Positions 36,364 through 54,481 of a stretch of DNA of 64,000 bases are shown piece by piece. The position numbers and the translations under genes were made by a program. Each line of letters opens with the position of its first letter. The stretch's first letter is position 1. Where the stretch lies: positions 232,643-296,642 of the IMG/VR virus record IMGVR_UViG_3300045135_002615, one strand, 5' to 3'. Below the pieces are notes generated by a model that had not been told where the DNA came from, did not search any database, and saw only the letters and a program-made list of their open reading frames with translations.

Positions 36364-37062
36364 ATGACTTATCGAGTAGATTCTAACTTGTCTATAACTA
36401 GGGTTGGGAATGGGGAGTCAACGGTGAACCTGAAACCATCAGATCATCACTTTGTGGCACACAATGGTCAGACGTTAGTCTTGCCTACCTTGGTTGGTAA
36501 TCTTGACCGTGAGGTGTGGTGTAAGCTAGGCGATGTCTACACCACTGGTGTGACTATCAACACCGCAGATCCCTCTGAGACAATCGAGGGGGATGCGAGT
36601 GTTACAATCGACACCGACTATGGCTATGTTGCACTATTGGCTACCTCATCAGGTTGGGTGGTAACTTCCTCTACAAAGGTAAAGCCACCTTCAATAGGGG
36701 ACGAGTCAAGGAATATCGCTACTACCTCTTATGTGAAAGGGAACATGAGAGTGGGATTAAATGAGGTGAACGCCTCACATACTCTTACACTCTCTGATGA
36801 GGGGTCTCTTATATTGTTTACGGGGCTCACCGCTGATGCTGTGCTTACAATACCTTTAGAGGCATCCGTGAACTTCCCTCTTGGGACACAAATGATGGTG
36901 ACGAATGCTACCTCTTTCAACTTGTCGATCACTCCAACCGCAGGGGTGAACCTTAACAGCAGTGGTGCAACAGGCACACGCACGCTTTCAGCTCAGTACT
37001 CAGGAGCGAGCTTGATTAAGACCGCTACAGATACTTGGTATCTCTTTGGCGACTTAGGTTGA
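36364..37062 (+). CDS. Tail fibre adaptor-like protein (paralog 1)
   Basis: MTYRVDSNL N-terminus; C-terminal FPLGTQ..QYSGASLIK..WYLFGDL domain. Confidence 0.75.
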   Translation: MTYRVDSNLSITRVGNGESTVNLKPSDHHFVAHNGQTLVLPTLVGNLDREVWCKLGDVYTTGVTINTADPSETIEGDASVTIDTDYGYVALLATSSGWVVTSSTKVKPPSIGDESRNIATTSYVKGNMRVGLNEVNASHTLTLSDEGSLILFTGLTADAVLTIPLEASVNFPLGTQMMVTNATSFNLSITPTAGVNLNSSGATGTRTLSAQYSGASLIKTATDTWYLFGDLG

Positions 37063-37069
37063 GAGACTG

Positions 37070-37750
37070 ATGCTTAAAGGAATGATGGGTTCAGTCTCTA
37101 GTGCCTTCTTCCCCTTGAAGCTCGTGGGTGCGATGTCTTATGACGGGGCTTCATCAAGTAACTTGTTAGTCTCTGATGTGACCGACTTAAAGATGAAAGG
37201 AAAGGACTTTACAATCGAGTGGTACCAATACCAAACAGACACCAACCCTAACCCCCGCATCTTCTCAAAGGGGACTTACCCTAACGCTGATGTTGCCGTC
37301 TCAATCGAGTCAAATGTTTTCTACTATTGGGAAGGAGGGTCTGCCATCTCAATCGCTACCTTGAGTAACTACAAGAACCGATGGGTTCACTTCGCAGTCA
37401 CTAGGGCTAGTGGAGCCATCAGGGTCTTCATGGATGGGGTTCTCTTAAACACATTCTCCTCAAACCATAACTACAACTCAAACTCTCAGCTAAGGATTGC
37501 TAATGAAGAGGTCTTGAGTTCGGGTTCTTATTTTGGAGGTCATCTCACCAACTTCCATTGGGCGGTGGGTCTTGCGAAGTATACCTCAAACTTTGAGAGA
37601 CCCTCCTCCCCAATATCACCTATTGCTCAAACGGACTTACTGCTCTTGGCTACGGACCTAGCTAACGTAACCACTGACTCAAGTGTTAACTCTTTGACTG
37701 CGGTCAACAACAATGTCACATGGTCAGCTTTCCGTAAGGTTATGAGTTAA
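37070..37750 (+). CDS. LamG/concanavalin A-like lectin protein
   Basis: DFTIEW, NRWVHFAVTR, IRVFMDG, YTSNF..P. Confidence 0.8.
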   Translation: MLKGMMGSVSSAFFPLKLVGAMSYDGASSSNLLVSDVTDLKMKGKDFTIEWYQYQTDTNPNPRIFSKGTYPNADVAVSIESNVFYYWEGGSAISIATLSNYKNRWVHFAVTRASGAIRVFMDGVLLNTFSSNHNYNSNSQLRIANEEVLSSGSYFGGHLTNFHWAVGLAKYTSNFERPSSPISPIAQTDLLLLATDLANVTTDSSVNSLTAVNNNVTWSAFRKVMS

Positions 37751-37799
37751 TAGACTTTTAATGGGAGAACTCCTTATGTGCCTACAGAGGAGTTGTGCC

Positions 37800-38426
37800 A
37801 TGTCTTATAGAGTTGACTCAAACCTAGTCGGTGTAAAGGTAGCCGCAGATGCGACCTCTTACACACTTGCTGTTACAGATGATCACTATGTTGCCTATGT
37901 AGGTCAAACGATCACCTTGCCTTCTTTAGCAAGTAGTTTAGGGCGTACCTTCTTCATTAAGCTTGGCTCTGTTGCAACCTCACCTGTCACAATCAACGCA
38001 GGTGGTTCAGATACAATAGAAGGTGCAAGCTCCTACACTCTAGAAACAGACTATGACTTCGTTGAGCTTGTAGGTGGTAGTTCCACATGGCTCATATCTA
38101 AGGAGTCGAACACTAGAATCCCTGTGAGCTCATGGACAACGAGTGCCACTCTCTCAAGGAGTGATGAAGGTGGCTTGATACAGAGCAACTCAACATCCGC
38201 GATTGTGGCTACCGTGCCACCTAACAGCTCAGCTGCTTTTCCTGTAGGCACTCAGATTATTCTTGCTCGTAAGAACACCGGGACGTTCTCAGTGACACCG
38301 GGTAGTGGAGTTACGATTAACTCTGTAGGGAGTAATCGCTTCATCTCAACACAATACGGGGCAGCGACACTCGTCAAGGTAGCCACTAACGAGTGGTATC
38401 TCTTTGGCGATCTCTCGGCATCGTAA
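37800..38426 (+). CDS. Tail fibre adaptor-like protein (paralog 2)
   Basis: MSYRVDSNL N-terminus; FPVGTQ..QYGAATLVK..WYLFGDL C-terminus. Confidence 0.75.
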   Translation: MSYRVDSNLVGVKVAADATSYTLAVTDDHYVAYVGQTITLPSLASSLGRTFFIKLGSVATSPVTINAGGSDTIEGASSYTLETDYDFVELVGGSSTWLISKESNTRIPVSSWTTSATLSRSDEGGLIQSNSTSAIVATVPPNSSAAFPVGTQIILARKNTGTFSVTPGSGVTINSVGSNRFISTQYGAATLVKVATNEWYLFGDLSAS

Positions 38427-39004
38427 TGATTGCTACAATTCATGGGGTTGCATCATCTCGGAGGAAGTATATCTCTTCATCTCTAGATGTAAGGGTTTTC
38501 AGTATTCACGCAGGTACGGGCAGTCAGACCCAGTACTTAAACTTCCCGACTACCAAGACTACCTTTGATCGTTTGTTTGATACGGGATATTCAAACACCT
38601 CTTTGTCTTGGACAGGTACGCTCAGTCCTAGTGTGGCTTTGAACCACTCAAATTATACGACACTCACTTCAGCGGGAGTGAGTGTACCCAATGCAGGTAA
38701 CTACTTCTCTTTAGAGGCAACAGGGGTATTCATCCCCAAAGAGACTGGCACTTACACGTTCTACATCGACTCGGACGATGGTAGTGATTTGTATATCGGG
38801 GGCAACCTTGTAGTCTCTTACTATGGTGGTCATGGTATTGGGACGAGCGTGAGTGGCACAATAAGCCTCATCTCAGGGAGAGCGTATACCTTCGTTGCAA
38901 GGATGCAAGAGTATCAAGGTGGTGAAGGTCTTATCTTGAAGTGGAGGAGACCTTCACAGGGTACTCAGACATTACAATCTGACGAGGTGTTCAGGACTCC
39001 GTAG
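38426..39004 (+). CDS. PA14-domain carbohydrate-binding protein
   Basis: FSLEATGVFIPKETGTYTFYIDSDDGSDLYI..QEYQGGEGLILKW; TAATG coupling. Confidence 0.85.
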   Translation: MIATIHGVASSRRKYISSSLDVRVFSIHAGTGSQTQYLNFPTTKTTFDRLFDTGYSNTSLSWTGTLSPSVALNHSNYTTLTSAGVSVPNAGNYFSLEATGVFIPKETGTYTFYIDSDDGSDLYIGGNLVVSYYGGHGIGTSVSGTISLISGRAYTFVARMQEYQGGEGLILKWRRPSQGTQTLQSDEVFRTP

Positions 39005-39046
39005 TTCTTCATCGGCACAACATTTGAACTAAGAAAGGTGGTAAAT

Positions 39047-39574
39047 ATGGAGCTAAATGAAAGAGTCGCAAAAAGGTACTTGTCTGCCTACCGCAAAGGG
39101 GACATTGAGATCAAAGTGGATACTCCAGAGGATCGTGATGCCAACTTTTCGGTGGGGCTTTATCGAGGTGACTCTCATGTGGGGTGGTGCGAAGCACATG
39201 TGGAGGCATACACAATACATGAACTCGAAGATTTTAATTGTTACAAGGACATCATGTCTGTGACCGCAACATGGTTAGCGGACATGGAAGAAGCGACCAA
39301 CGCAGTGACGGGTGTCGAAGGTATCTTGGTTGTAGAGGTTGTCTCTAGTGAATTAGAGGAGTCTCTTCAAGGTAAGAAGTGTGGCTATCAAATGTACCTG
39401 AAACTCATCCAAGAGGTATACAAAGAGTACGGCAGAATACCTTTTGTGTTCATCCCGAACTACTGTCACAATAGGTCTACCTCTGATGAGGCTCTAAGGG
39501 TATGGGCATCATTCGCCCGTAAATACCCTTCTGAAGGGGACGTTATTCTGATCACTCGTTACCCGAACCGATAA
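39047..39574 (+). CDS. GNAT-fold-like protein with RVAKRY N-terminal leader
   Basis: VVSSELEESLQGKKCGYQMY (motif A-like Q-G-x-G) and STSDEALRVW. Confidence 0.55.
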   Translation: MELNERVAKRYLSAYRKGDIEIKVDTPEDRDANFSVGLYRGDSHVGWCEAHVEAYTIHELEDFNCYKDIMSVTATWLADMEEATNAVTGVEGILVVEVVSSELEESLQGKKCGYQMYLKLIQEVYKEYGRIPFVFIPNYCHNRSTSDEALRVWASFARKYPSEGDVILITRYPNR

Positions 39575-39626
39575 AGTTTTAGATCGTTAATAGAGCCCCT
39601 TCTCAGACAACACAACAGGAGGGGTT

Positions 39627-40859
39627 ATGTCATATAAGGTCGATACCAATCTAACACAGATCAAAGTAGCTACAGACGCTACCTCATATACTCTCACACC
39701 GACAGACGAGGTGTATGTAGCATATGAGGGTCAGACCGTCACGCTACCTTCATTAGCTAATAGTCTTGGCAGGAGATACTTCGTAAAGTTAGGTTCTGTT
39801 GCCACTACAGGTTTTACGCTAACCGCAGGTGATGGTGACAACATTGAAGGTTCTTCAAGTGTCTCTGTCACTACAGACTTTGGGTCTGTAGAGGTCATCG
39901 GTGGCAGTTCTGCATGGTTGATTGGACAAAAGAGTTCCAAGCTCGAAGGTACTGGGTCGGAGGTCTCTGTGTCTGACGCGGGTGGGACTGCAACAATAGG
40001 CTTGCCCGATAGTGTGAGTGTTACGAGTAGTCTGACCGTAGCTGGATTAACATATCCCACTACGGACGGTACTACGGGTCAAGTGATCTCTACTAATGGT
40101 TCAGGTACATTAGGGTGGTCATCAGCAGGTGGTGGAGGGAGTACGACAGAGACACTATTCAAGATCGCTGATGGCAACACCACTTCCGATGGGACACTTG
40201 ACTTTGGTTTTTATGTGGAAAGGAACGCAACATCATGGGCGGGCTTTGTGTGGGACGAGAGCCAAGATCGTTTTATCCCCTTTGTGACAACAACAGAGCC
40301 GACAACTACTCTAACAGGAACTACCGCGAACATGGGTGCTAATATCCTGTACGCCACCACTGTCTCGGCTACTAACGTATCAAGCAGCTCTATCCTTTCG
40401 ACCAACGATATTCAAGCTGACAGCAACATTGTTGCTATTGCGGATGTCGCTGCATGGGGGACTCTTTTAGAGAGGTCTTACCCAACGACGTATAATAATG
40501 GGAGTACTTCTTCGGGTACTCCGACCGTACTGAATACGAACGACGTGTTGAGGTACTACCTCACCCTTGATGCAAACAATGCGGATCGGTATTACCAGTT
40601 CCCTACTGCTTCTGATCTCTATACTCAGATGAATAGCAGCAAGCCTACTTCAAACGTAGAGTTCAAGACTACCAACTTGATGAGGGCTGTTGATACGGCA
40701 GGTGTGAGTTCGGTCACTGTCCAAAACAACACGGGGGTGACTTTTTATGAGTCAGGTTCAAGCCTCCCTGTGACTGAGTTCGCCATGTTCCCAGGTACTG
40801 TGAGGGTGATGCACATCATCACTACGTCATCCACAACTGCGGATGTCATCTTGATCTGA
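39627..40859 (+). CDS. Tail fibre-like protein sharing the adaptor N-domain (paralog 3)
   Basis: MSYKVDTNL N-terminus; YPTTDGTTGQVISTNGSGTLGW fibre motif; GFYVER..WDES shared with the giant proteins. Confidence 0.75.
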   Translation: MSYKVDTNLTQIKVATDATSYTLTPTDEVYVAYEGQTVTLPSLANSLGRRYFVKLGSVATTGFTLTAGDGDNIEGSSSVSVTTDFGSVEVIGGSSAWLIGQKSSKLEGTGSEVSVSDAGGTATIGLPDSVSVTSSLTVAGLTYPTTDGTTGQVISTNGSGTLGWSSAGGGGSTTETLFKIADGNTTSDGTLDFGFYVERNATSWAGFVWDESQDRFIPFVTTTEPTTTLTGTTANMGANILYATTVSATNVSSSSILSTNDIQADSNIVAIADVAAWGTLLERSYPTTYNNGSTSSGTPTVLNTNDVLRYYLTLDANNADRYYQFPTASDLYTQMNSSKPTSNVEFKTTNLMRAVDTAGVSSVTVQNNTGVTFYESGSSLPVTEFAMFPGTVRVMHIITTSSTTADVILI

Positions 40860-40914
40860 TTTTTTATTCCTTTTATTGTGTCCTTCTATGGCAACTTCCA
40901 TTTGGAGAATGTAT

Positions 40915-41295
40915 ATGAGAAGAACAGCTAGTGAGATGATTAACGACCTTGAGATCAGGGTAGCCCGACTTGAGTCAAAGAAGGCTTTTTTTGGACTCTT
41001 CAGGAAGAGAGACGTAGTAGACGAACTGGTTGAGCAGATACTTAAGACTCAAGGAGTGGAGATCAATAAGATTAAGAGAAAGGAAATCAGTAGAGACTCT
41101 ACTTTGGTGAAGGGTAGGCTTGTCAATGGCGTAGAGTTCGAGATTTATCATGTTTTCCACCCTGTAGACTATGATATGGGTAGGTTTGAAGTTAAGTTCG
41201 ATGGTCGCATGGTCTATAGAGACGTATATAAGAATGGGCTTGGTAATTTCCTAGATCATAATGACATCGAGAAGGATATAAAGCCTTTTAAATAA
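40915..41295 (+). CDS. Hypothetical protein with RRTAS..RVARLE leader
   Basis: MRRTASEMINDLEIRVARLESKKAFFGLFRKR; GGAG SD. Confidence 0.7.
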   Translation: MRRTASEMINDLEIRVARLESKKAFFGLFRKRDVVDELVEQILKTQGVEINKIKRKEISRDSTLVKGRLVNGVEFEIYHVFHPVDYDMGRFEVKFDGRMVYRDVYKNGLGNFLDHNDIEKDIKPFK

Positions 41296-41746
41296 GAGTG
41301 AGCATCTTGATGTAGAGGATCAAGGCGGCGAAGAACATCTGTGTGATGGCTAAGTCAAACACCGGTATCTTGAAGCCCTTTGAATAGCGACATATGTCGG
41401 AAGTCTCCCTTAAGGGTAATGATCCTCTAATGAGATCCACTACCGCCCCCGCGAAGAATATGTCCCAATACATGCTCCCTGTGTCCACACAGAATAGTAC
41501 ACAGCCGATTAGATTGGGTACTCTTGGGGCGATACTTACAAGGGCGTCTTGCTTGAGTGTAAGATTGCCCTCGTATAGATAGCTAACTGACCCATATACG
41601 AACCCAAGTTTAGGGTGTTTATGGGGATAAGGTTTAATACTCCATGAGGTGACCTCTTTGAATCTTTTAAGGGCGAGGAGGTGAGCACCTTCATGGATGT
41701 ACGTCCACGAGATGTATGTGATAAGTGCCATTAGGGTATAGAACAT
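41288..41746 (-). CDS. Membrane zinc metallopeptidase-like protein (M50/DUF3267-like)
   Basis: IHEGAH (HExxH) within a hydrophobic helix, VSIAP, further TM segments. Confidence 0.7.
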   Translation of the reverse strand: MFYTLMALITYISWTYIHEGAHLLALKRFKEVTSWSIKPYPHKHPKLGFVYGSVSYLYEGNLTLKQDALVSIAPRVPNLIGCVLFCVDTGSMYWDIFFAGAVVDLIRGSLPLRETSDICRYSKGFKIPVFDLAITQMFFAALILYIKMLTLI

Positions 41747-41827
41747 AAGCTCTCCTTGTGGTATAAGGCTTTACTATCGGGGGGCTTGGTATAAATAAAC
41801 AACCCCCACAAACCTATGGAGAAACGC

Positions 41828-42832
41828 ATGAGCGATTTTACATTCACAAGAGGCACTTTCATTAAGCTCCGTGCCAACTCAGTCATCCACCTTGGTCGCC
41901 TTGAGCGTAACATCTATGAAGGTGATGTTGTTGAGTTTGACGGGCTTTCACTTAAGTTCAATGGTCAAGACATTGATATGCCAGAGCTCAAGGCGGGCAT
42001 CAAGCGTGGTTGGCTCTCTATCGTTGAAGAAAATGCCCAACCAGAGATCAAGAAGCCCGAAGTCAAGAAGGCTACCGAGATGCCTGTGCAGAAGGTGTAT
42101 GACGAGGAGAGGTCTGTAGCTGAGGTCACTGAGACCAAGCCATCGGAAGAGCCTAAAAAATTCCCCGTTGTGGTTCGTCAAGATGAGGATGGCATTGCTG
42201 TCGCCTCTATTGAGAGCAAGTCAGGTGCTGAGGTTTCCTCAGCTTCTTCTGCTTCTGACGGCATCTCAGAGTCACAGGGTGCTGATCCCGTAAGTACAAT
42301 CAAGCTCAAGACCGCTTCTAAGCAGAAGACTGTGATTAGTGAGGGTAGTCAAGCCTCTGCTGAGATCAGTCGTCTTGAGAACATCGAGGCTTCCGTGACA
42401 TCTCGTAAGGTTGAAGAGGGCATTGACCCTGTCCCCGTAGAGGAGGCTGTTCAGATCAATGATGAGGTAGACATTATTGAGGCACTCGCCACTCCTGAAG
42501 AGACCCCTTCTGAGGAGAACACCTCTCTTGAGCTCGAAGATGAGCCCACGTCTACTCCCGAAGAGGACGCGGCACTTGAGACCGCACAGCTCCTTCAAGC
42601 GATTGAGGGTGATGTTGACCCCTCTGTCGGTGCTGTAGCGATTGGTAAGGATGACTCCAAGATCAAGGTTCTCCCTGGTGGTATCGAGTGGGACACCTCA
42701 AAGCATTGGAGTAAGAGGGCTAAGATCGCTATGGACCTCTATGGTAACGATCCTGAGACCCTTGAGGCAATCAAGGCTGTAGAGACTAAGGGTGTGGTCG
42801 CTGCTATTGAGAAGGCAGTCGAGGAAGCCTAA
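41828..42832 (+). CDS. Acidic, largely disordered hypothetical protein
   Basis: Glu/Ser/Pro-rich centre with small folded ends; strong codon bias; own terminator. Confidence 0.75.
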   Translation: MSDFTFTRGTFIKLRANSVIHLGRLERNIYEGDVVEFDGLSLKFNGQDIDMPELKAGIKRGWLSIVEENAQPEIKKPEVKKATEMPVQKVYDEERSVAEVTETKPSEEPKKFPVVVRQDEDGIAVASIESKSGAEVSSASSASDGISESQGADPVSTIKLKTASKQKTVISEGSQASAEISRLENIEASVTSRKVEEGIDPVPVEEAVQINDEVDIIEALATPEETPSEENTSLELEDEPTSTPEEDAALETAQLLQAIEGDVDPSVGAVAIGKDDSKIKVLPGGIEWDTSKHWSKRAKIAMDLYGNDPETLEAIKAVETKGVVAAIEKAVEEA

Positions 42833-42862
42833 AAAAACACACCCCATAGTTCGATTTGATAT

Positions 42863-47742: not shown

Positions 47743-48002
47743 AGGTTCTCAATCCTTGACTCAATCCTTGAGATCACTTCATCAGCTTCGTTAAGTGCTA
47801 CCTTAAGTTCCTCAACCATGCGGTTACGCTCAGAGGTCAACCTCTCAATCTCTTCCTTCAATCTATCAGGGTCGATGCCTTTACCCCTTAAGCGTTGGTC
47901 TAGCTGGGCTAGATTTGCAGTCGCGGCTTCTAGCTTTCCGAGTAGGCGTTCTTTACGCCTTTCGAGGTCAGCCTTCTTTTGAGCGAGTTCTTGCAGGTTC
48001 AT
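47739..48002 (-). CDS. Small coiled-coil protein
   Basis: Heptad pattern with central GIDP turn; AAGGAG SD. Confidence 0.75.
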   Translation of the reverse strand: MNLQELAQKKADLERRKERLLGKLEAATANLAQLDQRLRGKGIDPDRLKEEIERLTSERNRMVEELKVALNEADEVISRIESRIENL

Positions 48003-48042
48003 GTTAGCTCCTTTGTTGGGTGTTACCTGTACACACCTTATA

Positions 48043-48573
48043 CTAAGATGCCCGATACCCTTCGCGGAAGAAATCTAACACCATGTCCAACAAGGTTGTG
48101 AAGCTCCTCGGAGAGTCTACATTTAGAATCAGATGGTTTACGATCTCGCCCTTGCTGTACTTATGGAAGGTAGCGGTGAACCTCGCATCGTTCGGTGAGT
48201 GAGATGGGACTAGAATCAAAGCGGTGGGGTCGAAGTACAAGCAAAGGGTATAGACATCCGACCCCTCAGCGTGTCGAGCTACTCCGACCACAGTCAAGTC
48301 CTCATCTTTGTAGATATCCTGGTCGAACTCAAGTACCTTGTCTCGTCCCGTTTCGTCTTTAAGTTTGCGTCCGTATGGGTGTGCGAGGGTAGGGGAGAAC
48401 CCTGTGTAGGTTGATAGGTTACACTCAACCATCGCTTCCCACCACGCTTGTTGGAGGTTCTCTGACATTTTATTTGTTTGACAGAAGACCTCGTAGTTGT
48501 CGAACCTATGCCACCAAGAACCTTCACGGGCGACTCTCTTACCCTCTACAATCTCAGTCCAATTGTTTGACAC
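48043..48573 (-). CDS. GKR-family paralog
   Basis: WTEIVEGKRVA N-terminus; SFTTLLDMVLDFFRE C-terminus. Confidence 0.75.
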   Translation of the reverse strand: MSNNWTEIVEGKRVAREGSWWHRFDNYEVFCQTNKMSENLQQAWWEAMVECNLSTYTGFSPTLAHPYGRKLKDETGRDKVLEFDQDIYKDEDLTVVGVARHAEGSDVYTLCLYFDPTALILVPSHSPNDARFTATFHKYSKGEIVNHLILNVDSPRSFTTLLDMVLDFFREGYRAS

Positions 48574-48991
48574 TCTTTTGCTCTCCTAAGTAGTATTGTC
48601 TAAACCCATCAAGTATCTCGTCTAGTAATTTTGAACCCACCCACCCATTGTGTTTGATTCGGTGTATACGAGTGTGTGATGACTTTCGAGCTCCTTGGAC
48701 CCACTCCATTCGGAGCTCTACATCAAGTTGATGCTCATACACTCTCATGAAGTAGGTCGTTCCTTCTGAATGTATGAGCATTGCCCCTACGATCTTTGCA
48801 TTAGGTATGAAGATATAGTCATTCTTGAGCAAGTCGCTTTTCTCGGATAGCTCAACCGTGAGCTTTTGAGGGAACTCAATCCCTATAAACAAGGGTACGA
48901 AGTGAGCCTCAGCTAGTGCATCAGGGAGTTCCTCCCATCTTGAAAAGTTTATGGCTCTCCTCTTACCGTCTATGATTTTAGTATACGTCAC
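48554..48991 (-). CDS. GKR-family paralog
   Basis: GTG start, YTKIIDGKRRA; LLDEILDGFRQYY. Confidence 0.7.
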   Translation of the reverse strand: MTYTKIIDGKRRAINFSRWEELPDALAEAHFVPLFIGIEFPQKLTVELSEKSDLLKNDYIFIPNAKIVGAMLIHSEGTTYFMRVYEHQLDVELRMEWVQGARKSSHTRIHRIKHNGWVGSKLLDEILDGFRQYYLGEQKSVKQLD

Positions 48992-49451
48992 TTGACTCAA
49001 CCTCTCTCCAATAGTCTCGGAAGATTTCAAGCAGCTCATCTAGGTACAAGGTGAACGACCCGTCAGAGAGGACGAATGTTCTCTCCATGTACATCATAGA
49101 CTCTCGCTCAGGTCTCCAACTGAGTTTGATCAGTCTGCCCTGACCTAGATATACTCTCAGCAAGAACACCTTTTTATTGTGTGTCAGCTTCATTGCTGCA
49201 AATATCCTTTGACTTGGATCAAGTGTCATCGCATCAACATGAGCCCATAAATACCTTTTACTGAGGTCAGCCAGCTTAATAGGGAACTCGATGTCAGGTG
49301 TAATGATCTTAAAGTTGGCTTCTTCAAGGGCTTCTTTTAGAGCGATGTGGATTCTAATTGCCACACCTTTCCTGAACACTTGATGGCTGTTCCACAGTAG
49401 TCCTTGGATGGCAACCCGCTTACCATCTACAATCTCAGTCCACTTACTCAT
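48978..49451 (-). CDS. GKR-family paralog
   Basis: MSKWTEIVDGKRVA; SFTLYLDELLEIFRDYWR. Confidence 0.75.
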   Translation of the reverse strand: MSKWTEIVDGKRVAIQGLLWNSHQVFRKGVAIRIHIALKEALEEANFKIITPDIEFPIKLADLSKRYLWAHVDAMTLDPSQRIFAAMKLTHNKKVFLLRVYLGQGRLIKLSWRPERESMMYMERTFVLSDGSFTLYLDELLEIFRDYWREVESSDVY

Positions 49452-49867
49452 TGGTTAGCTCTCCAAAATGTCCTGATTGAGTCAAGCAACTCGTTCATGT
49501 ATGATGTGAAAGTCTCTTCACGATAAATAGTAGCCTTATACGCCTCACTGATTGGTCTTCCTTTGTCCCACTCATCCATGATCATTGAGTGACGTTGACC
49601 CCCTCCGAAGTAAACTCTGATTCGATAGTCACGTCCCTCATGCATGAGTTGTCCATAATAGATTAGAGTCCCGTACTGACTCTTCTCCTCGTTGAGTGTC
49701 TGACCCTCAATAAGATCTCGGAAGTGACACTCTGCCAATGCCCCCCTAACCGACTCATGGAAAGAGTACTGCCAATTGCCAATACTGACCGAGAACATGT
49801 CACTATCCCAATCAAGATACTTTTTGGCTCTCCGCTTCCCGTCTACAATCTCAGTCCACTTACCCAT
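49448..49867 (-). CDS. GKR-family paralog
   Basis: MGKWTEIVDGKRRA; TFTSYMNELLDSIRTFWR. Confidence 0.75.
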   Translation of the reverse strand: MGKWTEIVDGKRRAKKYLDWDSDMFSVSIGNWQYSFHESVRGALAECHFRDLIEGQTLNEEKSQYGTLIYYGQLMHEGRDYRIRVYFGGGQRHSMIMDEWDKGRPISEAYKATIYREETFTSYMNELLDSIRTFWRANQ

Positions 49868-50300
49868 TGATCTTCCTCCAAAAGTCCCTAAAAGTCTCAA
49901 AGGTCGCGTCCAACAGCTCCGTTAAAGAGTCATAGTTCCCAACTACAATCAAAGAAGACCCCTCCTTCCTCGTGTAGACTAAGATGGTATGGGTGTCCCC
50001 ATTAGGATCGTAAAAAATACAGACCCTGTATACGATATGCTCAATGATCCTCTGATTGTAGGAGACCATGATTAAGTCGTTGTAGTTTGGTGCGTCTGCG
50101 ATCTCTTTGCGATACCAATCTACCTGCGATACTCTTTCGGCTTCAAAAAGGTACGCATCAAAACCCAACTCCTCAAAGGCTTGGTTTACCCACCAAGTGG
50201 TGTCGTGGATATAGCTATCTTTAGACACCTGTAGCTTCCCGCCCTCCCACTTTAGGTCGCACACAGCGACCCGTTTTCCGTTTTTTATTTGTGTGTACAT
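49860..50300 (-). CDS. GKR-family paralog
   Basis: MYTQIKNGKRVA; SLTELLDATFETFRDFWR. Confidence 0.75.
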   Translation of the reverse strand: MYTQIKNGKRVAVCDLKWEGGKLQVSKDSYIHDTTWWVNQAFEELGFDAYLFEAERVSQVDWYRKEIADAPNYNDLIMVSYNQRIIEHIVYRVCIFYDPNGDTHTILVYTRKEGSSLIVVGNYDSLTELLDATFETFRDFWRKING

Positions 50301-50353
50301 GTGTTCATCCTTTCATATGTTCTTATATGAAAGGGGGTGGGGGGTGAGTCGTC

Positions 50354-50620
50354 TTACCCCAATAAGATGCCTAGATTGGGGGCATAACCTATCCATCTCC
50401 AATCAAGCGTCCATGTGCGATTGAAGTCCTTGTCATAGATCATAATGGGTTGCTTCCTGTACGCACTACGGTTCAAAGCCTGTATGTCTACCCATACAGC
50501 CCCCCTGTATATCTTGCCATCAATCCTTAGACGCTTGACTGGGAAGTATACGTTCTCTAGGTATTCTACGAAGAGGTCAAAGTTCCTAAACCTCTTCCAT
50601 CGAGTTGCTTCTTTTAACAT
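50354..50620 (-). CDS. Hypothetical protein
   Basis: AGGAGG SD; preceded by TAG-N4-TT-WAT motif. Confidence 0.65.
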   Translation of the reverse strand: MLKEATRWKRFRNFDLFVEYLENVYFPVKRLRIDGKIYRGAVWVDIQALNRSAYRKQPIMIYDKDFNRTWTLDWRWIGYAPNLGILLG

Positions 50621-50659
50621 GGGGACACCTCCTGGTAGAAAAGCGACCCCATAAAACGA

Positions 50660-50866
50660 CTACTGATCCCTCTCAGCTTCCTTCAACCACTCACCAATGA
50701 GCTGAGGATATAGGTACATATAGTCAGGGGAAGTCCGACCCCTCAGCCCCTCCATTAGCTCTTGTCTCTCTTGGGCATCAAGAGGGACGCCTTTTTCTAG
50801 GTCGCGGATCATCTCATGTGCTCTTAAGCATAGAGCTCTGAGCCGGTACTCCTCGTTGTGTTCCAT
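50660..50866 (-). CDS. Hypothetical protein
   Basis: 68-aa ORF; GGAG SD. Confidence 0.55.
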   Translation of the reverse strand: MEHNEEYRLRALCLRAHEMIRDLEKGVPLDAQERQELMEGLRGRTSPDYMYLYPQLIGEWLKEAERDQ

Positions 50867-51149
50867 CTTTATCTACTCCAATGTAAATCTCATATCCGTA
50901 CTTCACAGGCATACATGAAACCATTTTCATTGTCTTACCCTTTGGTAGCGTTAAGACCACCTTGTTGAACCTCATGTCATCATCTGAGAAGATGAGGGTG
51001 ATCTCTGTCCCGTACTCTGTCTCTTGGGTGTATTCATTGACAGAGCATGACTTGTCGTGAGTCTCGACTTTAAACGTGTAAAGGTCAATGCTCTCACTTG
51101 TGCTTTCAACTGAATGGATTAGACCTTTACCGATCACTTCTAGTTCCAT
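50814..51149 (-). CDS. Hypothetical protein
   Basis: AAGGAGG SD. Confidence 0.65.
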   Translation of the reverse strand: MELEVIGKGLIHSVESTSESIDLYTFKVETHDKSCSVNEYTQETEYGTEITLIFSDDDMRFNKVVLTLPKGKTMKMVSCMPVKYGYEIYIGVDKDGTQRGVPAQSSMLKST

Positions 51150-51204
51150 ATATCCTCCTTATAGGTTTGGTGTGTAAACCCTATACGAGGTCTTCCCACA
51201 AAGC

Positions 51205-51248
51205 AAAAAAAACCCCCTCTCTGTCCATTTCGGTAGAGAGGGGGCTTT
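51205..51248 (-). terminator. Intrinsic terminator
   Basis: CCCCCTCTCT..AGAGAGGGGG stem; plus-strand A-run gives a U-tail on the minus strand. Confidence 0.75.
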
Positions 51249-51253
51249 AGGGT

Positions 51254-51679
51254 TTACCGCTTCAAGGTGTCCCCCGTAGGGGTTCCATCATCAGGGGGAG
51301 GTGGGCAATGCTCAAAGTTAGGCTCTGCCACTACATCCTGGCAGAGATTAGCATCGAGCTTGACTACATCGTTACCCTTTACGAAGGTGATATAGCCTTC
51401 TTTGTCCTCACCTGTTGAGGTGTAATGTTGAAAGGTCACAAACTGACCATCTAACATACACACTTGAGTGACCTGTGGGCAGACAGGACACTCTTTCTCA
51501 ACGATGATGACTTTAGGGTCTTCGTCAGCGGGTGCCCCTGCCGTGATAGAGGAGCTTTCCTCCTCGTAGGTGTCTACGGGAGGTGCTTCCTCTACACCTC
51601 CATTAAGGAGGTACATCGCACCTGCGAGGAGGGTCGCGTATGCCACGAAGGATAGTCCGTATGTTGTTAAATCTTTCAT
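51254..51679 (-). CDS. Membrane-anchored protein with Cys pairs
   Basis: N-terminal TM helix; CPVCP..C..C..C. Confidence 0.7.
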   Translation of the reverse strand: MKDLTTYGLSFVAYATLLAGAMYLLNGGVEEAPPVDTYEEESSSITAGAPADEDPKVIIVEKECPVCPQVTQVCMLDGQFVTFQHYTSTGEDKEGYITFVKGNDVVKLDANLCQDVVAEPNFEHCPPPPDDGTPTGDTLKR

Positions 51680-51849
51680 GGCATAGCCTTTCCGAGATGA
51701 TAACCTGCCGTAGTCGTGAGTATGGAACAGATCATAAATGAGATGAAGCTCTTCTTTGCCATGGCAAAGAGGAGGACAATGGTGCCACCGAGCAACCCGA
51801 TAAAGATGATTGCTAAGAGAATGTTTACAATGAGGTCGAGGGTCTTCAT
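51676..51849 (-). CDS. 57-aa two-TM micro-protein, not in the ORF track
   Basis: MKTLDLIVNILLAIIFIGLLGGTIVLLFAMAKKSFISFMICSILTTTAGYHLGKAMP; GGGAG SD; ATGA overlap. Confidence 0.65.
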   Translation of the reverse strand: MKTLDLIVNILLAIIFIGLLGGTIVLLFAMAKKSFISFMICSILTTTAGYHLGKAMP

Positions 51850-51859
51850 AGCTACTCCC

Positions 51860-51982
51860 TTATTGACAGCTTAGGGAGAAGATGAGACAGGTATACCCTG
51901 TGACCACCGTCATCGCTAGAACCGACAAGAACGTCATCACATATGCAATGGTGATGATGATTGTTTGTCCGAGTGTGTCCAT
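51860..51982 (-). CDS. 40-aa TM micro-protein, not in the ORF track
   Basis: MDTLGQTIIITIAYVMTFLSVLAMTVVTGYTCLIFSLSCQ; AAGGA SD. Confidence 0.6.
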   Translation of the reverse strand: MDTLGQTIIITIAYVMTFLSVLAMTVVTGYTCLIFSLSCQ

Positions 51983-51994
51983 GTTAATTTCCTT

Positions 51995-52090
51995 TTAATT
52001 AATAAATGATAGTGAAAAGATTAAGAACTCTGCGAAGCAGATAGCACCGCAGATTGCGAGACCTAAGATGAAGATGAGAGACTGAGACAT
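51995..52090 (-). CDS. 31-aa TM micro-protein
   Basis: MSQSLIFILGLAICGAICFAEFLIFSLSFIN; starts 2 nt after the upstream stop. Confidence 0.55.
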   Translation of the reverse strand: MSQSLIFILGLAICGAICFAEFLIFSLSFIN

Positions 52091-52092
52091 TT

Positions 52093-52464
52093 TTAGGCAC
52101 CTAGAGAGAGTGTCTTGAGGATGAACCTCGTGGGCTTCCAAGAGAAAATCTTGAAGATTGCCTCTTGGGGTCCGAGCTTGCCGAGTGCCAAGAAGGGCCA
52201 AATGATGCAACCCAGAAGGAAGATACCCGTCTGTGAGAGAAGCTCTAAGAAGCCGAGCTCACGGTCACGCTTCTTGGGGAAAGCCCTCTCCCAACGGAGT
52301 TGCCACCAAAGGAAGAAGATCCACCCGCCGATGAGGGCGAACTGCGGGTTGGCAAGCAAGAACCCGATCCAAAGATCAAGACCCTCAGTCCCCAAGTTCA
52401 AAAGACTCTCACCCCAAGCGATGGTGCTGTCGATGCCTGCTTCAATAGTATTTAAGATAGACAT
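52093..52464 (-). CDS. Membrane protein
   Basis: Two hydrophobic helices; GGAG SD. Confidence 0.7.
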   Translation of the reverse strand: MSILNTIEAGIDSTIAWGESLLNLGTEGLDLWIGFLLANPQFALIGGWIFFLWWQLRWERAFPKKRDRELGFLELLSQTGIFLLGCIIWPFLALGKLGPQEAIFKIFSWKPTRFILKTLSLGA

Positions 52465-52548
52465 TTTGTTACTCCATGTGTAAGTGTGTTTGTTTTTATA
52501 TATATCAACAGCTTAGACGGGTGACTTTTTAATAAAAAAGGGTTTTAC

Positions 52549-53055
52549 ATGAGCCGTAAAAAAATAGATGTTTCTCAACAAGACATTGAACTGTCTTTTG
52601 TGCGTGATCTGATCACAAGGTCTTTTTTTCAAAGTGATGGGGTTGCTCCTCTGTATCAAAAACACTCAGAGGTACTCGATCATTGGGCGTTAAGGGGGTG
52701 GGTCAATATGGGTGAACTCACATCTCAAGGCAAAGCGAGAGTGCGAGAGCTCCAATATTATTTTGACCGACCCTCAGACCGCACAGGTAAGCTGCTATTC
52801 TTACTCGATAAAGCAATACCCTTGATGAAGGTCACTCCACGAAACCGAACCTTCATACGCAAGGTCGCTAGGGTTTTAAACTTCCACCCTCGTGATCCTA
52901 GAGACTTATTGAAGCCTTCCGATGTGACGAGACTCAGGAACTTGCTCATTAAGCATCTTGGTGATTATGAGTCACGCTTACCCACACTGCCCGCTGACTA
53001 TCCATTTGAGTGGGAGATTCAGAGACTATTGACTAATGGACCAGTGAGGTATTGA
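52549..53055 (+). CDS. Hypothetical protein
   Basis: 168-aa ORF; no recognised motif. Confidence 0.6.
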   Translation: MSRKKIDVSQQDIELSFVRDLITRSFFQSDGVAPLYQKHSEVLDHWALRGWVNMGELTSQGKARVRELQYYFDRPSDRTGKLLFLLDKAIPLMKVTPRNRTFIRKVARVLNFHPRDPRDLLKPSDVTRLRNLLIKHLGDYESRLPTLPADYPFEWEIQRLLTNGPVRY

Positions 53056-53104
53056 GCCATAGTTCCTTTATAAAGGTCGATATAGGTCTAATAAGGGGTT
53101 GACT

Positions 53105-54481
53105 ATGATCGCAACACTACATGGGATAGCATCTGCTTCAAGGGGGCTCTCAAGAGTTATTACAAATAACCTAGTCCTTCACTACAACACCTTTAACCCT
53201 AGCTCATATGTTAAAGGTCAAGGGACCACAATCAACGACCTCTCAGGGAACGGACTACATGGGACAATCGTTGGAAGTCCTCCATGGTCTACCAACTACT
53301 TTTCGTTCTCTAATGACTACATCACCTCCGCGAACTTAGCACCTTCTCTGACTGAAGTACACACCGCAGAACTATGGGTTTACCCTACAGGTAATGGTGT
53401 ACTCTTACAAGCTAATGCTCAAGCTACACCGAACACTAGCTACCATCACTCCACCATAGAGATTGTAGCAGGCAAACTAGAATTCGGTCTGTGGAACGGC
53501 TCAGGTATCACCTCTACAGGTCCAACCTCTACTATCTCTTTCAATCAATGGCATCAAGTAGTCCTTACTTACGATGGCTCAATCATCAGAGGATATCTTG
53601 ATGGTTCGTTCGCGGGTTCCGTCAATGTCACATGGGACTCTCCAGAGGACAGCACGGGTGTTTTCTACTACAACTTCGGTTATAGAGACACCACATCTCA
53701 AGGTGATGGGACTGACTTTGATGGTCGTTTTGGGATTATGAGGATCTATAGTGTTGCCTTCTCCCTACAGGCTATCCAACAGAACTACAATGCGGTCACA
53801 GGAAACGTCAGTGACTTAGTGTCGGATACCCTCAGACTCTATTATGACCCTTCTCTCTCAGCGTCATATAGCTCACCGAGTAGCCTCATTTATAATCTTG
53901 CTCCCAATACAAACACAGGCACTCTCTCTAATGTCTCCGCCAATGGTACTTACCTCACCTTTAACGGCTCAAGTTCTCAAGTCTCTGTCCCTGACTCTTC
54001 TATCTTAGAACCTGGTTCATCTAACTTCACAATAGAAGCATGGGTAAGGATACATAGCTTTGGGAGTACAATGGTGATTGCAGGTAAGTTTGATAACGGG
54101 GGCTTGGCAGCGGATGTCTCTTATTCACTACGGGTCAACGCATCAGGTGTCTTAAGATGTGAGGTAGGAGATGGCACAGGCTCACTAGATAGTCCTCTCT
54201 ATCAGGCTACAACCAACACATGGTATCAAGTCGTAGGTGTGATAGATAACACGAACAATCAGCTCAAGCTCTATATCAATGGTGTATCTCAAGGCACACC
54301 TACCACCATGAGCTATACGAGTATCTTGAATAGTGCGAACAATCTGTATCTAGGTAGCTACAACAACGGGGAATATTCTCAGTACCTTGATGGGGACTTA
54401 GGGGTAGTGAGGGTCTATCAAAGGGCTTTGACTGATGCGGAGGTGTTGGCGAACTACAACTACGACAGATCCAAGTATTGA
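53105..54481 (+). CDS. Tandem LamG/concanavalin A-like lectin protein
   Basis: LVLHY..DLSGNGLHGT, NQWHQVVLTYDG, FTIEAWV, NTWYQVV, VRVYQRALTDAEVLANYN; two LamG repeats. Confidence 0.85.
   Translation: MIATLHGIASASRGLSRVITNNLVLHYNTFNPSSYVKGQGTTINDLSGNGLHGTIVGSPPWSTNYFSFSNDYITSANLAPSLTEVHTAELWVYPTGNGVLLQANAQATPNTSYHHSTIEIVAGKLEFGLWNGSGITSTGPTSTISFNQWHQVVLTYDGSIIRGYLDGSFAGSVNVTWDSPEDSTGVFYYNFGYRDTTSQGDGTDFDGRFGIMRIYSVAFSLQAIQQNYNAVTGNVSDLVSDTLRLYYDPSLSASYSSPSSLIYNLAPNTNTGTLSNVSANGTYLTFNGSSSQVSVPDSSILEPGSSNFTIEAWVRIHSFGSTMVIAGKFDNGGLAADVSYSLRVNASGVLRCEVGDGTGSLDSPLYQATTNTWYQVVGVIDNTNNQLKLYINGVSQGTPTTMSYTSILNSANNLYLGSYNNGEYSQYLDGDLGVVRVYQRALTDAEVLANYNYDRSKY

What the first reader, a model, noticed from the sequence alone, without database searches (positions are those of the whole stretch)
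36364..54481. Modular adhesin kit: paralogous adaptors plus lectins with a shared N-terminal peptide, including a distant orphan
Seen: genes 36364, 37800 and 39627 begin M[ST]Y[RK]VD[ST]NL and share a ~100-aa N-domain. That domain resembles the last domain of the 3113-aa giant (TVNADGTETISGSAS..WYVM versus TINAGGSDTIEGASS..WLI). Two adaptors end in WYLFGDL and are each followed directly by a sugar-binding gene: LamG (MLKGMMGSVSS) or PA14 (MIATIHGVASS). A tandem-LamG gene 14 kb away starts MIATLHGIASAS and has its own late motif but no adaptor. Established: the T-even gp38 adhesin caps the gp37 fibre tip through its N-terminal region. Inference: interchangeable lectin tips dock on common adaptors, giving combinatorial receptor recognition without DNA inversion or a DGR.
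Basis: partly seen in the sequence, partly recalled or inferred. Interest (0 to 1): 0.75.

Follow-up and report, generated by a model that had tools for sequence, protein, structure and literature searches.

The report
Plug-and-socket adhesin tips on phage fibres
A jumbo phage encodes small "socket" proteins next to sugar-binding proteins that all start with the same 11-residue "plug"; the same gene pairing occurs in many other phages with freely swapped cargo, so it is probably a general way to clip exchangeable adhesins onto fibres, though binding itself is not yet shown.

Summary
Three paralogues (36364, 37800, 39627) share an N-terminal peptide and a ~95-aa domain that is homologous to the last domain of the 3113-aa fibre (hhalign 98.3%). 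Two of them end in a second knob (WYLFGDL) and are followed by a LamG gene (7-nt gap) and a PA14 gene (start overlaps the stop). A distant tandem-LamG gene carries the same N-peptide.

The AF2 model (pLDDT 92) shows two beta-sandwich knobs. Their best fold matches are CBA120 TSP4 XD2 (a T4 gp10-like docking platform) and the trimeric C-terminal knob of the Pa223 spike.

The pairing is general. In 77 of 84 knob-ending ORFs from viral contigs, a gene starting MI[LKA]xxHGxx[AS]S begins within a few bases of the stop. The peptide is conserved at protein level with free synonymous change. At least six unrelated cargo families sit behind it, and near-identical fibres carry unrelated cargo, with the breakpoint just after the peptide. 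In two relatives the "orphan" LamG lies inside the cassette.

Best reading: a peptide-in-knob docking system for exchangeable lectin-like tips. It is a new variant of the known branching-domain/docking-peptide principle (K1-5, G7C, CBA120, KP32).

Physical binding is inferred, not shown; the one complex prediction gave no verdict. The "late motif" was not established.

The parts
25831..35172 (+). Giant fibre protein (3113 aa). Its last ~86 residues (about nt 34912-35169) form an 'N-type' knob ending ...KGNNWYVM.
   Evidence: Translation. hhalign of the adaptor N-domain profile against the giant-tip family: 98.3%, E 1.4e-14. The 375-kb relative L005 has the same giant ending ...GTSWYIL, followed directly by the knob proteins.
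36364..37062 (+). Adaptor 1 (232 aa): N-peptide MTYRVDSNL, N-type knob, long linker, divergent C-type knob (about nt 36736-37059) ending WYLFGDLG.
   Evidence: PHROG tail-fibre C-terminal families phrog_8780 and phrog_16053. The block 36295-37798 has no nucleotide counterpart in the close relative L095.
37070..37750 (+). LamG-fold protein (226 aa) with the His-less variant plug MLKGMMGSVSS (37070-37102). It starts 7 nt after the adaptor 1 stop.
   Evidence: Pfam Laminin_G_3, E 1.1e-9. PHROG virion and baseplate families. Similar His-less plugs occur in PhiJL001 gp88, Marinobacter phage PS6 and L038.
37800..38426 (+). Adaptor 2 (208 aa): flexible N-peptide MSYRVDSNL (37800-37826), N-type knob (about 37827-38114), C-type knob (about 38115-38423) ending WYLFGDLSAS.
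   Evidence: AF2 model: pLDDT 92.3, residues 1-10 at ~51, two beta-sandwich domains. Fold matches: Z 15.1 to the Pa223 spike C-terminal knob, Z 12.5 to CBA120 TSP4 XD2, Z 11.2 to a KP1 baseplate protein over both domains.
38426..39004 (+). PA14-domain protein (192 aa) with plug MIATIHGVASS (38426-38458). Its ATG shares one base with the adaptor 2 stop codon.
   Evidence: Pfam PA14, E 2.6e-17. In 24 homologues H6 and G7 are nearly invariant and the SDDGSD motif is invariant.
39627..40859 (+). Third paralogue (410 aa): same N-peptide (MSYKVDTNL) and N-type knob, then a fibre-shaft motif and its own distal domain. It has no C-type knob and no lectin partner.
   Evidence: Few homologues. The C-terminal part resembles distal domains of phage fibres (lead only).
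53105..54481 (+). Tandem-LamG protein (458 aa) with plug MIATLHGIASAS (53105-53140), unlinked from any adaptor. The start is the ATG at 53105, with AAGGGG 8 nt upstream, not the TTG at 53099.
   Evidence: Pfam Laminin_G_3 x2, E 7.7e-43. The L085 orthologue (458 aa, MLKTMHGIVVSA) lies directly after the adaptor. The only homologue in the L005 genome is the cassette LamG, 67% identical over residues 1-236.

Best explanation
The region encodes a plug-and-socket system for mounting exchangeable carbohydrate-binding tips on virion fibres.

Socket: the 'C-type' knob, a ~100-aa beta-sandwich that always sits at the extreme C-terminus and ends W-Y-L-F-G-D-[LI] plus 2-5 residues. By analogy with its nearest solved relatives it is trimeric.

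Plug: the first 11-13 residues of the gene that starts at or within a few bases of the knob gene's stop codon. The consensus is M-I-[LKA]-x-x-H-G-[IVL]-[IVL]-[ASG]-S, with core Phi-G-Phi-Phi-[AS]-S.

In this phage:
- Adaptor 1 recruits the LamG protein.
- Adaptor 2 recruits the PA14 protein and probably also the unlinked tandem-LamG protein, whose plug is nearly identical to PA14's.
- All three paralogues share a flexible M[ST]Y peptide plus an N-type knob. This is probably their common means of attachment to the virion. The M[ST]Y peptide may plug into the N-type knob at the tip of the 3113-aa fibre, giving a daisy chain of fibre, adaptor and lectin.

Shown: the genes, the domains, the folds (predicted), the conservation, the coupling and the cargo exchange.
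Inferred: that plug binds socket, that the lectins are in the virion, and that they bind host glycans.
For: 1. Fold. The adaptor model has pLDDT 92.3. Its N-domain matches CBA120 TSP4 XD2 (Z 12.5). XD2 and XD3 are the platforms that bind other tailspikes. Its C-domain matches the trimeric C-terminal knob of Pa223 gp52 (Z 15.1, rmsd 1.6 A). T4 gp10 and gp9 also appear in the Foldseek list.

2. Coupling. 77 of 84 knob-ending ORFs are followed by a plug-bearing gene, mostly at offset -1, +1 or -4 nt. In a more diverse sample, 6 of 6 have a gene at -4 to +8 nt; three of these start with a clear G-x-x-[AS]-S core and a fourth (PGNTSSQ) resembles it.

3. Selection on the protein. Gly7 uses all four codons, Ser11 uses both TCN and AGT, and Leu3 uses TTA and CTT.

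4. Modularity. Six unrelated cargo groups share the plug, with these domain types: LamG, PA14, BNR/sortilin plus LamG, GH54-like, Gly_rich_2, and a 265-aa family with no Pfam match. In 276 locus pairs the last 200 aa of the fibre are at least 80% identical (many 98-100%) while the cargo is unrelated. DNA identity stays at 70-100% (mostly 87-100%) through the fibre end and is still 90% in the first 30 nt of the cargo gene, then falls to random.

5. Lineage. L005, L085, L095 and L097 keep adaptor and lectins together in varying combinations.

6. The knob is strictly C-terminal in all 53 close homologues where its end motif was found. P0021 joins a T4_gp9_10_N domain to this knob.

7. Second pair. 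Genes that follow N-type-knob ends start M[ST][YF] in 7 of 19 cases against a 2% background (P 5e-8; 6 of 18 without the relative seen beforehand).

8. The principle is experimentally established elsewhere: K1-5 gp37, G7C, KP32 (PMC6872550, PMC13352976).
Against: - There is no direct evidence of binding. The single complex prediction gave no verdict, which counts neither way.
- Plug and knob end lie within ~30 nt of each other, so their co-inheritance could be plain linkage.
- The same fold also serves as a glycan-binding-like module (CpaA 6o38, Z 9.0; StcE, Z 7.2) and occurs in tandem arrays of up to 22 copies. It is therefore not always a terminal socket.
- Some knob proteins have no partner (Mesorhizobium phage: a holin follows). 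Gordonia phages use a different N-terminus.
- No virion proteomics exists for this lineage.
- In L085 the module lies beside a capsid-like gene, so its place on the virion is open.
Confidence: 0.55

Rival explanations
1. The downstream proteins are fibre-specific assembly chaperones (as with Tfa of Mu/P2 or T4 gp38/gp57). They use the N-peptide to grip the knob during folding or trimerisation and then may leave.
For: A gene immediately downstream of a fibre gene and translationally coupled to it is the classic position of a tail-fibre chaperone. The knob is highly conserved, as a chaperone's client site would be.
Against: - The cargo is not conserved with its fibre. Unrelated families follow 98-100% identical fibre ends.
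- Cargo reaches 783-875 aa and contains LamG, PA14 and beta-propeller domains.
- No hit to any chaperone family in Pfam or NCBIfam.
- LamG relatives are annotated as virion structural proteins in S-PM2 and in PHROGs.
Confidence: 0.1
2. The plug does not bind the adjacent knob. It is a common address for another site (baseplate, another fibre, or self-trimerisation of the cargo). Its adjacency to the knob reflects operon order, and recombination at the conserved sequence explains the cassette exchange.
For: - The unlinked tandem LamG keeps the plug without a neighbouring knob.
- One adaptor precedes two lectins in L095 and L085.
- Linkage alone explains co-segregation of plug and knob tail.
Against: - The association holds across very distant lineages with different gene orders: jumbo phages, 30-65-kb contigs and MAG contigs.
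- The plug flavour changes when the knob's last strand changes: WDLTGD or WDATGD go with His-less plugs, and the Gordonia knobs with another motif.
- Stand-alone single-knob proteins of 110-119 aa exist with no apparent role other than partnering the next gene.
Confidence: 0.15
3. The knobs are themselves the receptor- or glycan-binding heads, and the downstream lectin-like proteins are independent accessory adhesins. Alternatively, the whole set decorates the capsid rather than the tail.
For: - Fold matches to the glycan-binding-like repeats of CpaA and StcE (PMC10253068).
- The best match is a capsid spike knob described as a TNF fold.
- In L085 the module follows a capsid-like gene.
Against: - Receptor-binding heads are usually the most variable part of a fibre. 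This knob is 98-100% conserved between loci with different cargo, and 45-55% conserved from actinophages to jumbo phages.
- In the window and in L005 the cassette follows giant fibre and tail genes.
Confidence: 0.12

Closest known systems
Adapter/branching-domain plus conserved docking peptide systems of podophages and Ackermannviridae (K1-5/K1E/SP6 gp37 adapter; G7C gp66-gp63.1; CBA120 TSP4/TSP2 XD domains; Klebsiella KP32/KP34 RBP1-RBP2)
   Same: - A beta-sandwich T4 gp10-like domain serves as the socket.
- The partner lacks its own anchor and carries a short conserved N-terminal peptide (7-29 aa).
- The distal parts are exchanged between phages.
- The interaction has been validated experimentally for KP32, K11 and KP34 (PMC6872550, PMC13352976).
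- The adaptor N-domain matches TSP4 XD2 with Z 12.5.
   Different: - Here the socket is a strictly C-terminal (distal) knob, or a tiny stand-alone protein, not a proximal branching domain behind a tail anchor.
- The plug sequence is unrelated.
- The partners are small lectin-like beta-sandwich proteins, not trimeric beta-helix depolymerases.
- No Pfam T4 gp9/10 model matches the adaptors.
- The genes are translationally coupled.
T2/T6/S16-type gp38 adhesin capping the gp37 long-tail-fibre tip
   Same: The arrangement in L089 matches this logic: a 384-aa fibre ending in the knob, followed by PA14.
   Different: - No sequence or domain similarity to gp38.
- The plug is only ~11 residues.
- The cargo is LamG, PA14 or another domain, not a polyglycine sandwich.
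- In this phage the tip is provided by free-standing adaptors.
T4 gp9 and gp10 baseplate sockets
   Same: Both are trimeric beta-sandwich domains that receive the N-terminal end of another fibre: gp34 on gp9, and gp11/gp12 on gp10. Foldseek lists 1qex and 2fl8/5iv5 among the matches. Homologue P0021 joins the T4_gp9_10_N domain to this knob.
   Different: The similarity is weak (E about 0.03). gp9 and gp10 are baseplate proteins with fixed partners, not exchangeable cassettes.
Pseudomonas phage Pa223 gp52 capsid spike C-terminal knob (9ny6)
   Same: It is the best structural match to the C-type knob (Z 15.1, rmsd 1.6 A, 97 residues). It is a homotrimer with the knob at the distal end of a beta-helix.
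   Different: It is a capsid decoration. No partner protein is described, and sequence identity is 14%.
Hyperbranched fibre complexes of Klebsiella jumbo phages (RaK2/phiK64-1, phiKp24)
   Same: These are jumbo phages that assemble many receptor-binding proteins through XD domains and conserved N-terminal elements (PMC10253068, PMC9700779).
   Different: Those carry depolymerase tailspikes on one large anchor protein with several XD domains. Here there are three small paralogous adaptors and lectin-like tips.

Membership tests
Branched RBP system (T4 gp10-like branching domain + docking peptide) | A protein carrying a T4 gp10-like (XD) beta-sandwich domain | tested here: met
   Met at fold level only. 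AF2 model pLDDT 92.3. VIA Z 12.5 to CBA120 TSP4 XD2 and Z 11.2 to a KP1 baseplate protein over both domains. Foldseek gives T4 gp10 at E 0.03. No Pfam or NCBIfam sequence match.
Branched RBP system (T4 gp10-like branching domain + docking peptide) | Partner RBPs lack an anchor domain and share a short conserved N-terminal peptide | tested here: met
   Three lectin genes in the window. 77 of 84 knob-ending ORFs in other contigs are followed by such a gene. Conservation is at protein level.
Branched RBP system (T4 gp10-like branching domain + docking peptide) | The peptide physically binds the domain and is needed for incorporation into the virion | tested here: inconclusive
   One complex prediction (C-knob x3 + PA14 x3) returned 'no answer'.
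Branched RBP system (T4 gp10-like branching domain + docking peptide) | The socket lies proximally, behind an N-terminal tail anchor, and the partners are trimeric tailspikes or depolymerases | tested here: not met
   The knob is strictly C-terminal in all 53 close homologues where its end motif was found. The partners are LamG, PA14 and similar domains.
T2-type gp38 tip adhesin | Adhesin gene directly downstream of the distal fibre gene | tested here: met
   Offsets of -4 to +7 nt in the window and in most loci.
T2-type gp38 tip adhesin | Homology to gp38 (attachment domain plus glycine-rich receptor-binding sandwich) | tested here: not met
   Pfam and PHROG give LamG and PA14 only.
Tail-fibre assembly chaperone (Tfa / Caudo_TAP) | Small conserved chaperone family that co-varies with its fibre | tested here: not met
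   No chaperone family hit. Cargo is unrelated behind identical fibres.
PA14 domain | Pfam PF07691 above the gathering score | tested here: met
   63.4 bits against a cut-off of 24. The SDDGSD motif is invariant in 25 sequences. Its role in Ca/sugar binding rests on knowledge of fungal and bacterial PA14 adhesins and was not tested here.
LamG / concanavalin A-like (Laminin_G_3) | Pfam PF13385 above the gathering score | tested here: met
   39 bits (37070 gene) and 146.7 bits with two stretches (53105 gene), against a cut-off of 27.6. Sugar binding was not tested.

The most novel reading that the evidence does not exclude
Two short sequence 'codes' may govern end-to-end assembly of fibre segments across a very large part of the tailed-phage world.
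- Code 1: an N-type knob (...DGSNWxIx-COOH) receives proteins that start M[ST][YF].
- Code 2: a C-type knob (...WYLFGD[LI]xx-COOH) receives proteins that start with a Phi-G-Phi-Phi-[AS]-S plug.

The C-type knob alone has 36,506 representative clusters at 50% identity. The window's phage would use both codes in series: giant fibre, then one of three adaptors, then one of three lectins. This would give mixed populations of tips from fixed genes, and would allow receptor-binding architecture to be read from sequence.
Probability: 0.3. Interest if true: 0.8.

Novelty: new variant of a known kind. Interest (0 to 1): 0.62.

Why it matters
If the plug really docks in the knob, three things follow.

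1. Annotation. A very large family of unannotated phage proteins gains a function. The knob has no Pfam or NCBIfam model that matches these proteins, yet it has about 36,500 clusters at 50% identity. Thousands of "hypothetical" genes downstream of fibre genes could then be recognised as the actual distal adhesins.

2. Host-range evolution. It would explain how environmental phages, including jumbo phages, change or multiply receptor specificity by swapping cassettes at a 13-codon boundary, without DGRs or invertases.

3. A minimal handle. An 11-residue tag would be a small natural handle for studying how receptor-binding modules are mounted on fibres.

It also extends the docking-peptide principle, so far shown only for tailspike depolymerases of enterobacterial phages, to lectin-like tips and to distal rather than proximal sockets.

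Tried and rejected
- Complex prediction (adaptor 2 residues 100-208 x3 with PA14 x3, own alignments): 'no answer', score 0.00, controls not run. This is no evidence either way. The 3:3 design was also unlike the tool's calibration.
- blastn of 36000-41000 against GenBank phages: no match.
- Profile search of PDB sequences: nothing significant, best E 0.19.
- Pfam and NCBIfam on the adaptors: no family.
- DNA pattern joining the knob end to the plug: only 2 loci, because the gap window was too narrow and position 5 of my first regular expression was too strict. The first scan therefore wrongly suggested that most 'GDI' fibres lacked a partner. This was corrected.
- Search for natural knob-plug-cargo fusions (Rosetta stone) among 147 representatives and 60 homologues: none.
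- P0098-P0101 were taken as possible adaptor 1 orthologues. They share only the fibre-shaft motif.
- hhalign of N-type against C-type knob: not significant (6.9%). Their common fold rests on the structure search only.
- 'Late motif': weak enrichment only. The sigma-70 scan is at the chance level.
- Cultured Flavobacterium phages (immuto, elemo) have LamG genes after fibre genes but neither knob nor plug.
- Scan of bacterial genomes: only 6 loci, 2 of them with plug-like partners.

Full report
**Context.** The window is the last 64 kb of a 296,642-bp IMG/VR virus record with 95% estimated completeness, that is, a jumbo phage. It carries a GroEL-like gene, an endolysin, a protein with weak matches to tape-measure families, a sliding-clamp-like gene and two giant fibre proteins of 3139 and 3113 aa. 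It has no nucleotide match among GenBank phages.

**Observation.**
- Adaptors. The three genes start MTYRVDSNL (36364), MSYRVDSNL (37800, an internal ATG of ORF 37761) and MSYKVDTNL (39627). They share the first ~100 residues.
- Lectin genes. Adaptors 1 and 2 end WYLFGDLG and WYLFGDLSAS. A LamG gene follows adaptor 1 after 7 nt (37070, MLKGMMGSVSS). A PA14 gene follows adaptor 2 with its ATG sharing a base with the stop (38426, MIATIHGVASS).
- Orphan. The tandem-LamG gene starts at ATG 53105 (MIATLHGIASAS), with a Shine-Dalgarno sequence placed for that ATG.
- Specificity. A loose pattern for the plug matches only these three gene starts in the whole genome.
- Giant fibre. The similarity to the giant's last domain is marginal by BLASTP. 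It is strong profile to profile (98.3%, E 1.4e-14).
- The 'late motif' could not be established.

**Anatomy.** AlphaFold2 with a 32-sequence alignment gives a confident model of adaptor 2 (pLDDT 92.3). It has two beta-sandwich domains (residues ~9-105 and ~106-206), and the first ten residues have low confidence.

Exhaustive structural alignment gives these matches:
- C-domain: Z 15.1 (rmsd 1.6 A) to the C-terminal knob of the trimeric Pa223 gp52 spike.
- N-domain: Z 12.9 to a domain of the Acinetobacter phage Solidus tailspike, and Z 12.5 to XD2 of CBA120 TSP4.
- Both domains in tandem: Z 11.2 to a Klebsiella phage KP1 baseplate protein.
- Lower matches: Z 9.0 to the glycan-binding-like repeats of CpaA and Z 7.2 to StcE.

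Foldseek adds T4 gp10 and gp9 at E about 0.03. XD2 and XD3 of TSP4 are the platforms on which other tailspikes assemble (PMC10253068). The Pa223 knob caps a homotrimeric beta-helix.

The two knob types share the fold but not detectable sequence similarity. I call them N-type (giant tip and the adaptor N-domains) and C-type (WYLFGDL).

The third paralogue has the N-peptide and N-type knob, then a fibre-shaft motif and its own distal domain. It is a short fibre, not a lectin adaptor.

**Relatives of this phage.**
- L005 (a 375,691-bp phage): the giant fibre (ending ...GTSWYIL) is followed directly by two 111-aa single C-type knob proteins (MTFLIDN..., MTYLVEK...). A LamG protein (MIKTFHGVVVSA) and a PA14 protein (MIKSLHGVVAV) come next, and then the same flanking genes as in the window. 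Its only homologue of the window's 'orphan' is that cassette LamG (67% identity to residues 1-236).
- L085 (a 129-kb contig): a 204-aa two-knob adaptor is followed by a 458-aa tandem LamG (MLKTMHGIVVSA) and a PA14 (MIRTVHGQILSA).
- L095 (88-96% identical to the window): one adaptor (94% identical to adaptor 2) precedes a LamG (MIRSLHGVISS, 50% identical to the window's LamG) and the PA14 (94%). The window's adaptor 1 + LamG block (36295-37798) has no counterpart there.
- L097: adaptor followed by PA14.

Cassette content therefore varies even among close relatives, and the 'orphan' is a relocated cassette member.

**The module is general.** The C-type knob is the C-terminal domain of 'minor tail' and 'tail fiber' PHROG families. 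It occurs in more than 220 Gordonia phage minor tail proteins and in phages of Ruegeria, Brevundimonas, Marinobacter, Mesorhizobium and others. A profile search of 1.84 billion representatives finds 36,506 clusters at E <= 1e-3, including tandem arrays of up to 22 copies. No Pfam or NCBIfam model matches the adaptors.

Among the 80 IMG/VR loci recovered with adaptor 2, taken together with the other fetched loci and the window:
- 77 of 84 ORFs ending in the knob are followed by a gene starting M-I-[LKA]-[SAT]-x-H-G-[IVL]-[IVL]-[ASG]-S. Offsets are mostly -1, +1 or -4 nt. Gly7 is invariant and His6 is present in 30 of 34 unique peptides.
- Of the seven exceptions, two are loci that end at the knob, three carry variant plugs, one (L005) is followed by the second knob protein, and one (L051) has an unrelated gene downstream.
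- The peptide is under protein-level selection: Ser11 is encoded by TCN and AGT, Leu3 by TTA and CTT, and Gly7 by all four codons.
- The cargo behind the plug falls into at least six unrelated groups. They cover a ~265-aa family without a Pfam match, GH54-catalytic-like, Gly_rich_2, LamG, PA14, and a 783-aa sortilin/BNR-like + LamG protein.
- In 276 locus pairs the last 200 fibre residues are at least 80% identical (many 98-100%) while the cargo is unrelated.
- For L062 against L063, DNA identity is 70-100% (mostly 87-100%) through the fibre's last 600 nt and 90% in the first 30 nt of the cargo gene. It then falls to chance level. The exchange boundary is thus the end of the plug.

The knob's end motif lies 2-5 residues from the C-terminus in all 53 close homologues where it was found. 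In 100 of 147 top representatives a W...G-[D/S/N/E/R/G/Q] motif lies within 6 residues of the C-terminus. Six more diverse knob proteins all have a gene at -4 to +8 nt. Three of these start with a clear G-x-x-[AS]-S core (FGIWASQ, LGILAS, LGNTASQ) and a fourth with the related PGNTSSQ.

Cultured examples:
- PhiJL001 gp87 (knob ending ...EWDLTGDLQLA) is followed by gp88 (875 aa, MLQNLFLGTVSAA, LamG-like C-terminus).
- The Marinobacter phage PS6 knob protein is followed by an RCC1-repeat protein (MSLLVTSAVSSS).
- Gordonia phage Nubi gp36, a 119-aa single knob, is followed by gp37 with a different motif (MVLPAPRFR).
- The knob gene of one Mesorhizobium phage is followed by a holin.

The window's LamG plug (MLKGMMGSVSS) belongs to the His-less flavour. 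It pairs with the most divergent knob, that of adaptor 1.

**A possible second pair.** The window's adaptors start M[ST]Y, and those residues are not part of the fold. I therefore asked what follows ORFs that end in the N-type knob in other contigs. Seven of 19 unique downstream genes start M[ST][YF] (MSYF..., MSYL..., MSYH..., MSYS..., MTYS..., MTFL...). The background is 2.0% of 1693 ORF starts (binomial P 5e-8; 6 of 18 without the relative seen beforehand). This suggests that the adaptors' own N-peptide plugs into the giant fibre's terminal knob, giving a daisy chain. It remains an inference.

**Mechanism and rivals.** The best-supported reading is that the plug docks in or on the C-type knob. 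Lectin-like proteins would thereby become exchangeable distal tips of fibres or of small free-standing adaptors.

On this reading adaptor 1 carries LamG. Adaptor 2 carries PA14 and probably the tandem LamG. The third paralogue brings its own tip. All three share one mode of attachment.

The rivals, with the main point for or against each:
- A chaperone role. This is contradicted by the cargo's diversity, size and exchange.
- A plug that addresses some other site. This is possible, because plug and knob end are physically linked on the DNA.
- Knobs that are themselves glycan binders, or capsid decorations. The fold allows it and L085's context hints at it, but the knob's extreme conservation argues against a receptor-binding head.

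The single complex prediction gave no verdict and is not used as evidence.

**Comparison and novelty.** The principle is established: a gp10-like socket plus a short conserved N-terminal docking peptide on an anchor-less receptor-binding protein. It is known for K1-5/K1E/SP6 and G7C, and was recently shown by engineering for KP32, K11 and KP34.

The differences here are:
- a distal, strictly C-terminal socket of another sequence family (or a stand-alone knob);
- an unrelated 11-13-residue plug;
- translational coupling of the two genes;
- lectin-like instead of depolymerase cargo;
- an apparently enormous distribution outside enterobacterial phages.

I found no description of this knob/plug pair in the searchable literature. 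That library is incomplete. I rate it a new variant of a known kind.

**Limits.** All evidence for binding is comparative or by structural analogy. The host is unknown. No isolate of this lineage exists in the collections searched. The locus sample is biased toward knobs similar to the query.

Noticed in passing
window 25776-25836, 14530-14593, 57385-57443, 37752-37805, 39578-39632, 16296-16360: Strong 5'-UTR hairpins lie directly upstream of several structural genes, and the 3' arm contains the Shine-Dalgarno GGAG. Giant B: -29.1 kcal/mol, z -7.4. Gene 14588: -24.1 kcal/mol, z -6.6. Gene 57438: z -3.9. Adaptor 2: z -3.75. Giant A: z -2.7. Adaptor 3: z -2.5. They are absent before adaptor 1 and weak before the tandem LamG (z -1.5). 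Several begin at a CTTTTA(A/T) element. They may be a translational-control or mRNA-stability feature of late genes.
   Followed up: partly
window 39047-39574 (+): A 175-aa ORF sits between the PA14 gene and the third paralogue. It is conserved at 94% in relative L095. ESM-Atlas features and structure point to a GNAT acetyltransferase-like fold (TM 0.5-0.65; lead only). An acetyltransferase inside a receptor-binding cluster is unexplained.
   Followed up: partly
window 35217-35837 (+) and 35834-36334 (-): Two genes are inserted between the giant fibre and adaptor 1, relative to L005. One is a secreted or lipoprotein-like protein with a signal-like hydrophobic stretch. The other lies on the opposite strand, and the product at the same position in relative L097 hits Pfam Pyr_excise (pyrimidine-dimer glycosylase). 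They look like morons.
   Followed up: no
L100-L131; window 36364, 37800, 39627, 35170: ORFs that end in the N-type knob (...DGSNWxIx) are followed by genes starting M[ST][YF] in 7 of 19 unique cases, against a 2% background (P 5e-8). This is a possible second plug/socket pair linking the giant fibre to the adaptors.
   Followed up: partly
P0103 (3206 aa), P0104 (2401 aa) from the representative library: The C-type knob also occurs in tandem arrays of up to 22 copies in giant proteins, so it is not only a terminal domain. After internal copies the next domain follows about 7-10 residues after 'GDL', with no plug-like motif.
   Followed up: partly
window 40876-41295 (+); L085 9048-9704: The ORF after the third paralogue contains MRRTASEMINDLEIRVARLE. 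In L085 the gene just upstream of the adaptor starts with the similar MRRSASNVIRDLEMRIARLE. This is a conserved neighbour of unknown function.
   Followed up: no
window 57438-59072 (+): A 544-aa glycine-rich protein with no Pfam or PHROG match lies downstream of the tandem-LamG region. It may be another fibre or spike component.
   Followed up: no
L091 (Flavobacterium phage immuto) 3504-4869: In this cultured 160-kb phage a tail-fibre-like gene is followed by two LamG 'structural proteins', the first with an overlapping start, and then by a third, 459-aa protein with a similar C-terminal tail. The first begins MAEIHGP..., but no C-type knob precedes it. This may be a distant or convergent analogue.
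   Followed up: partly
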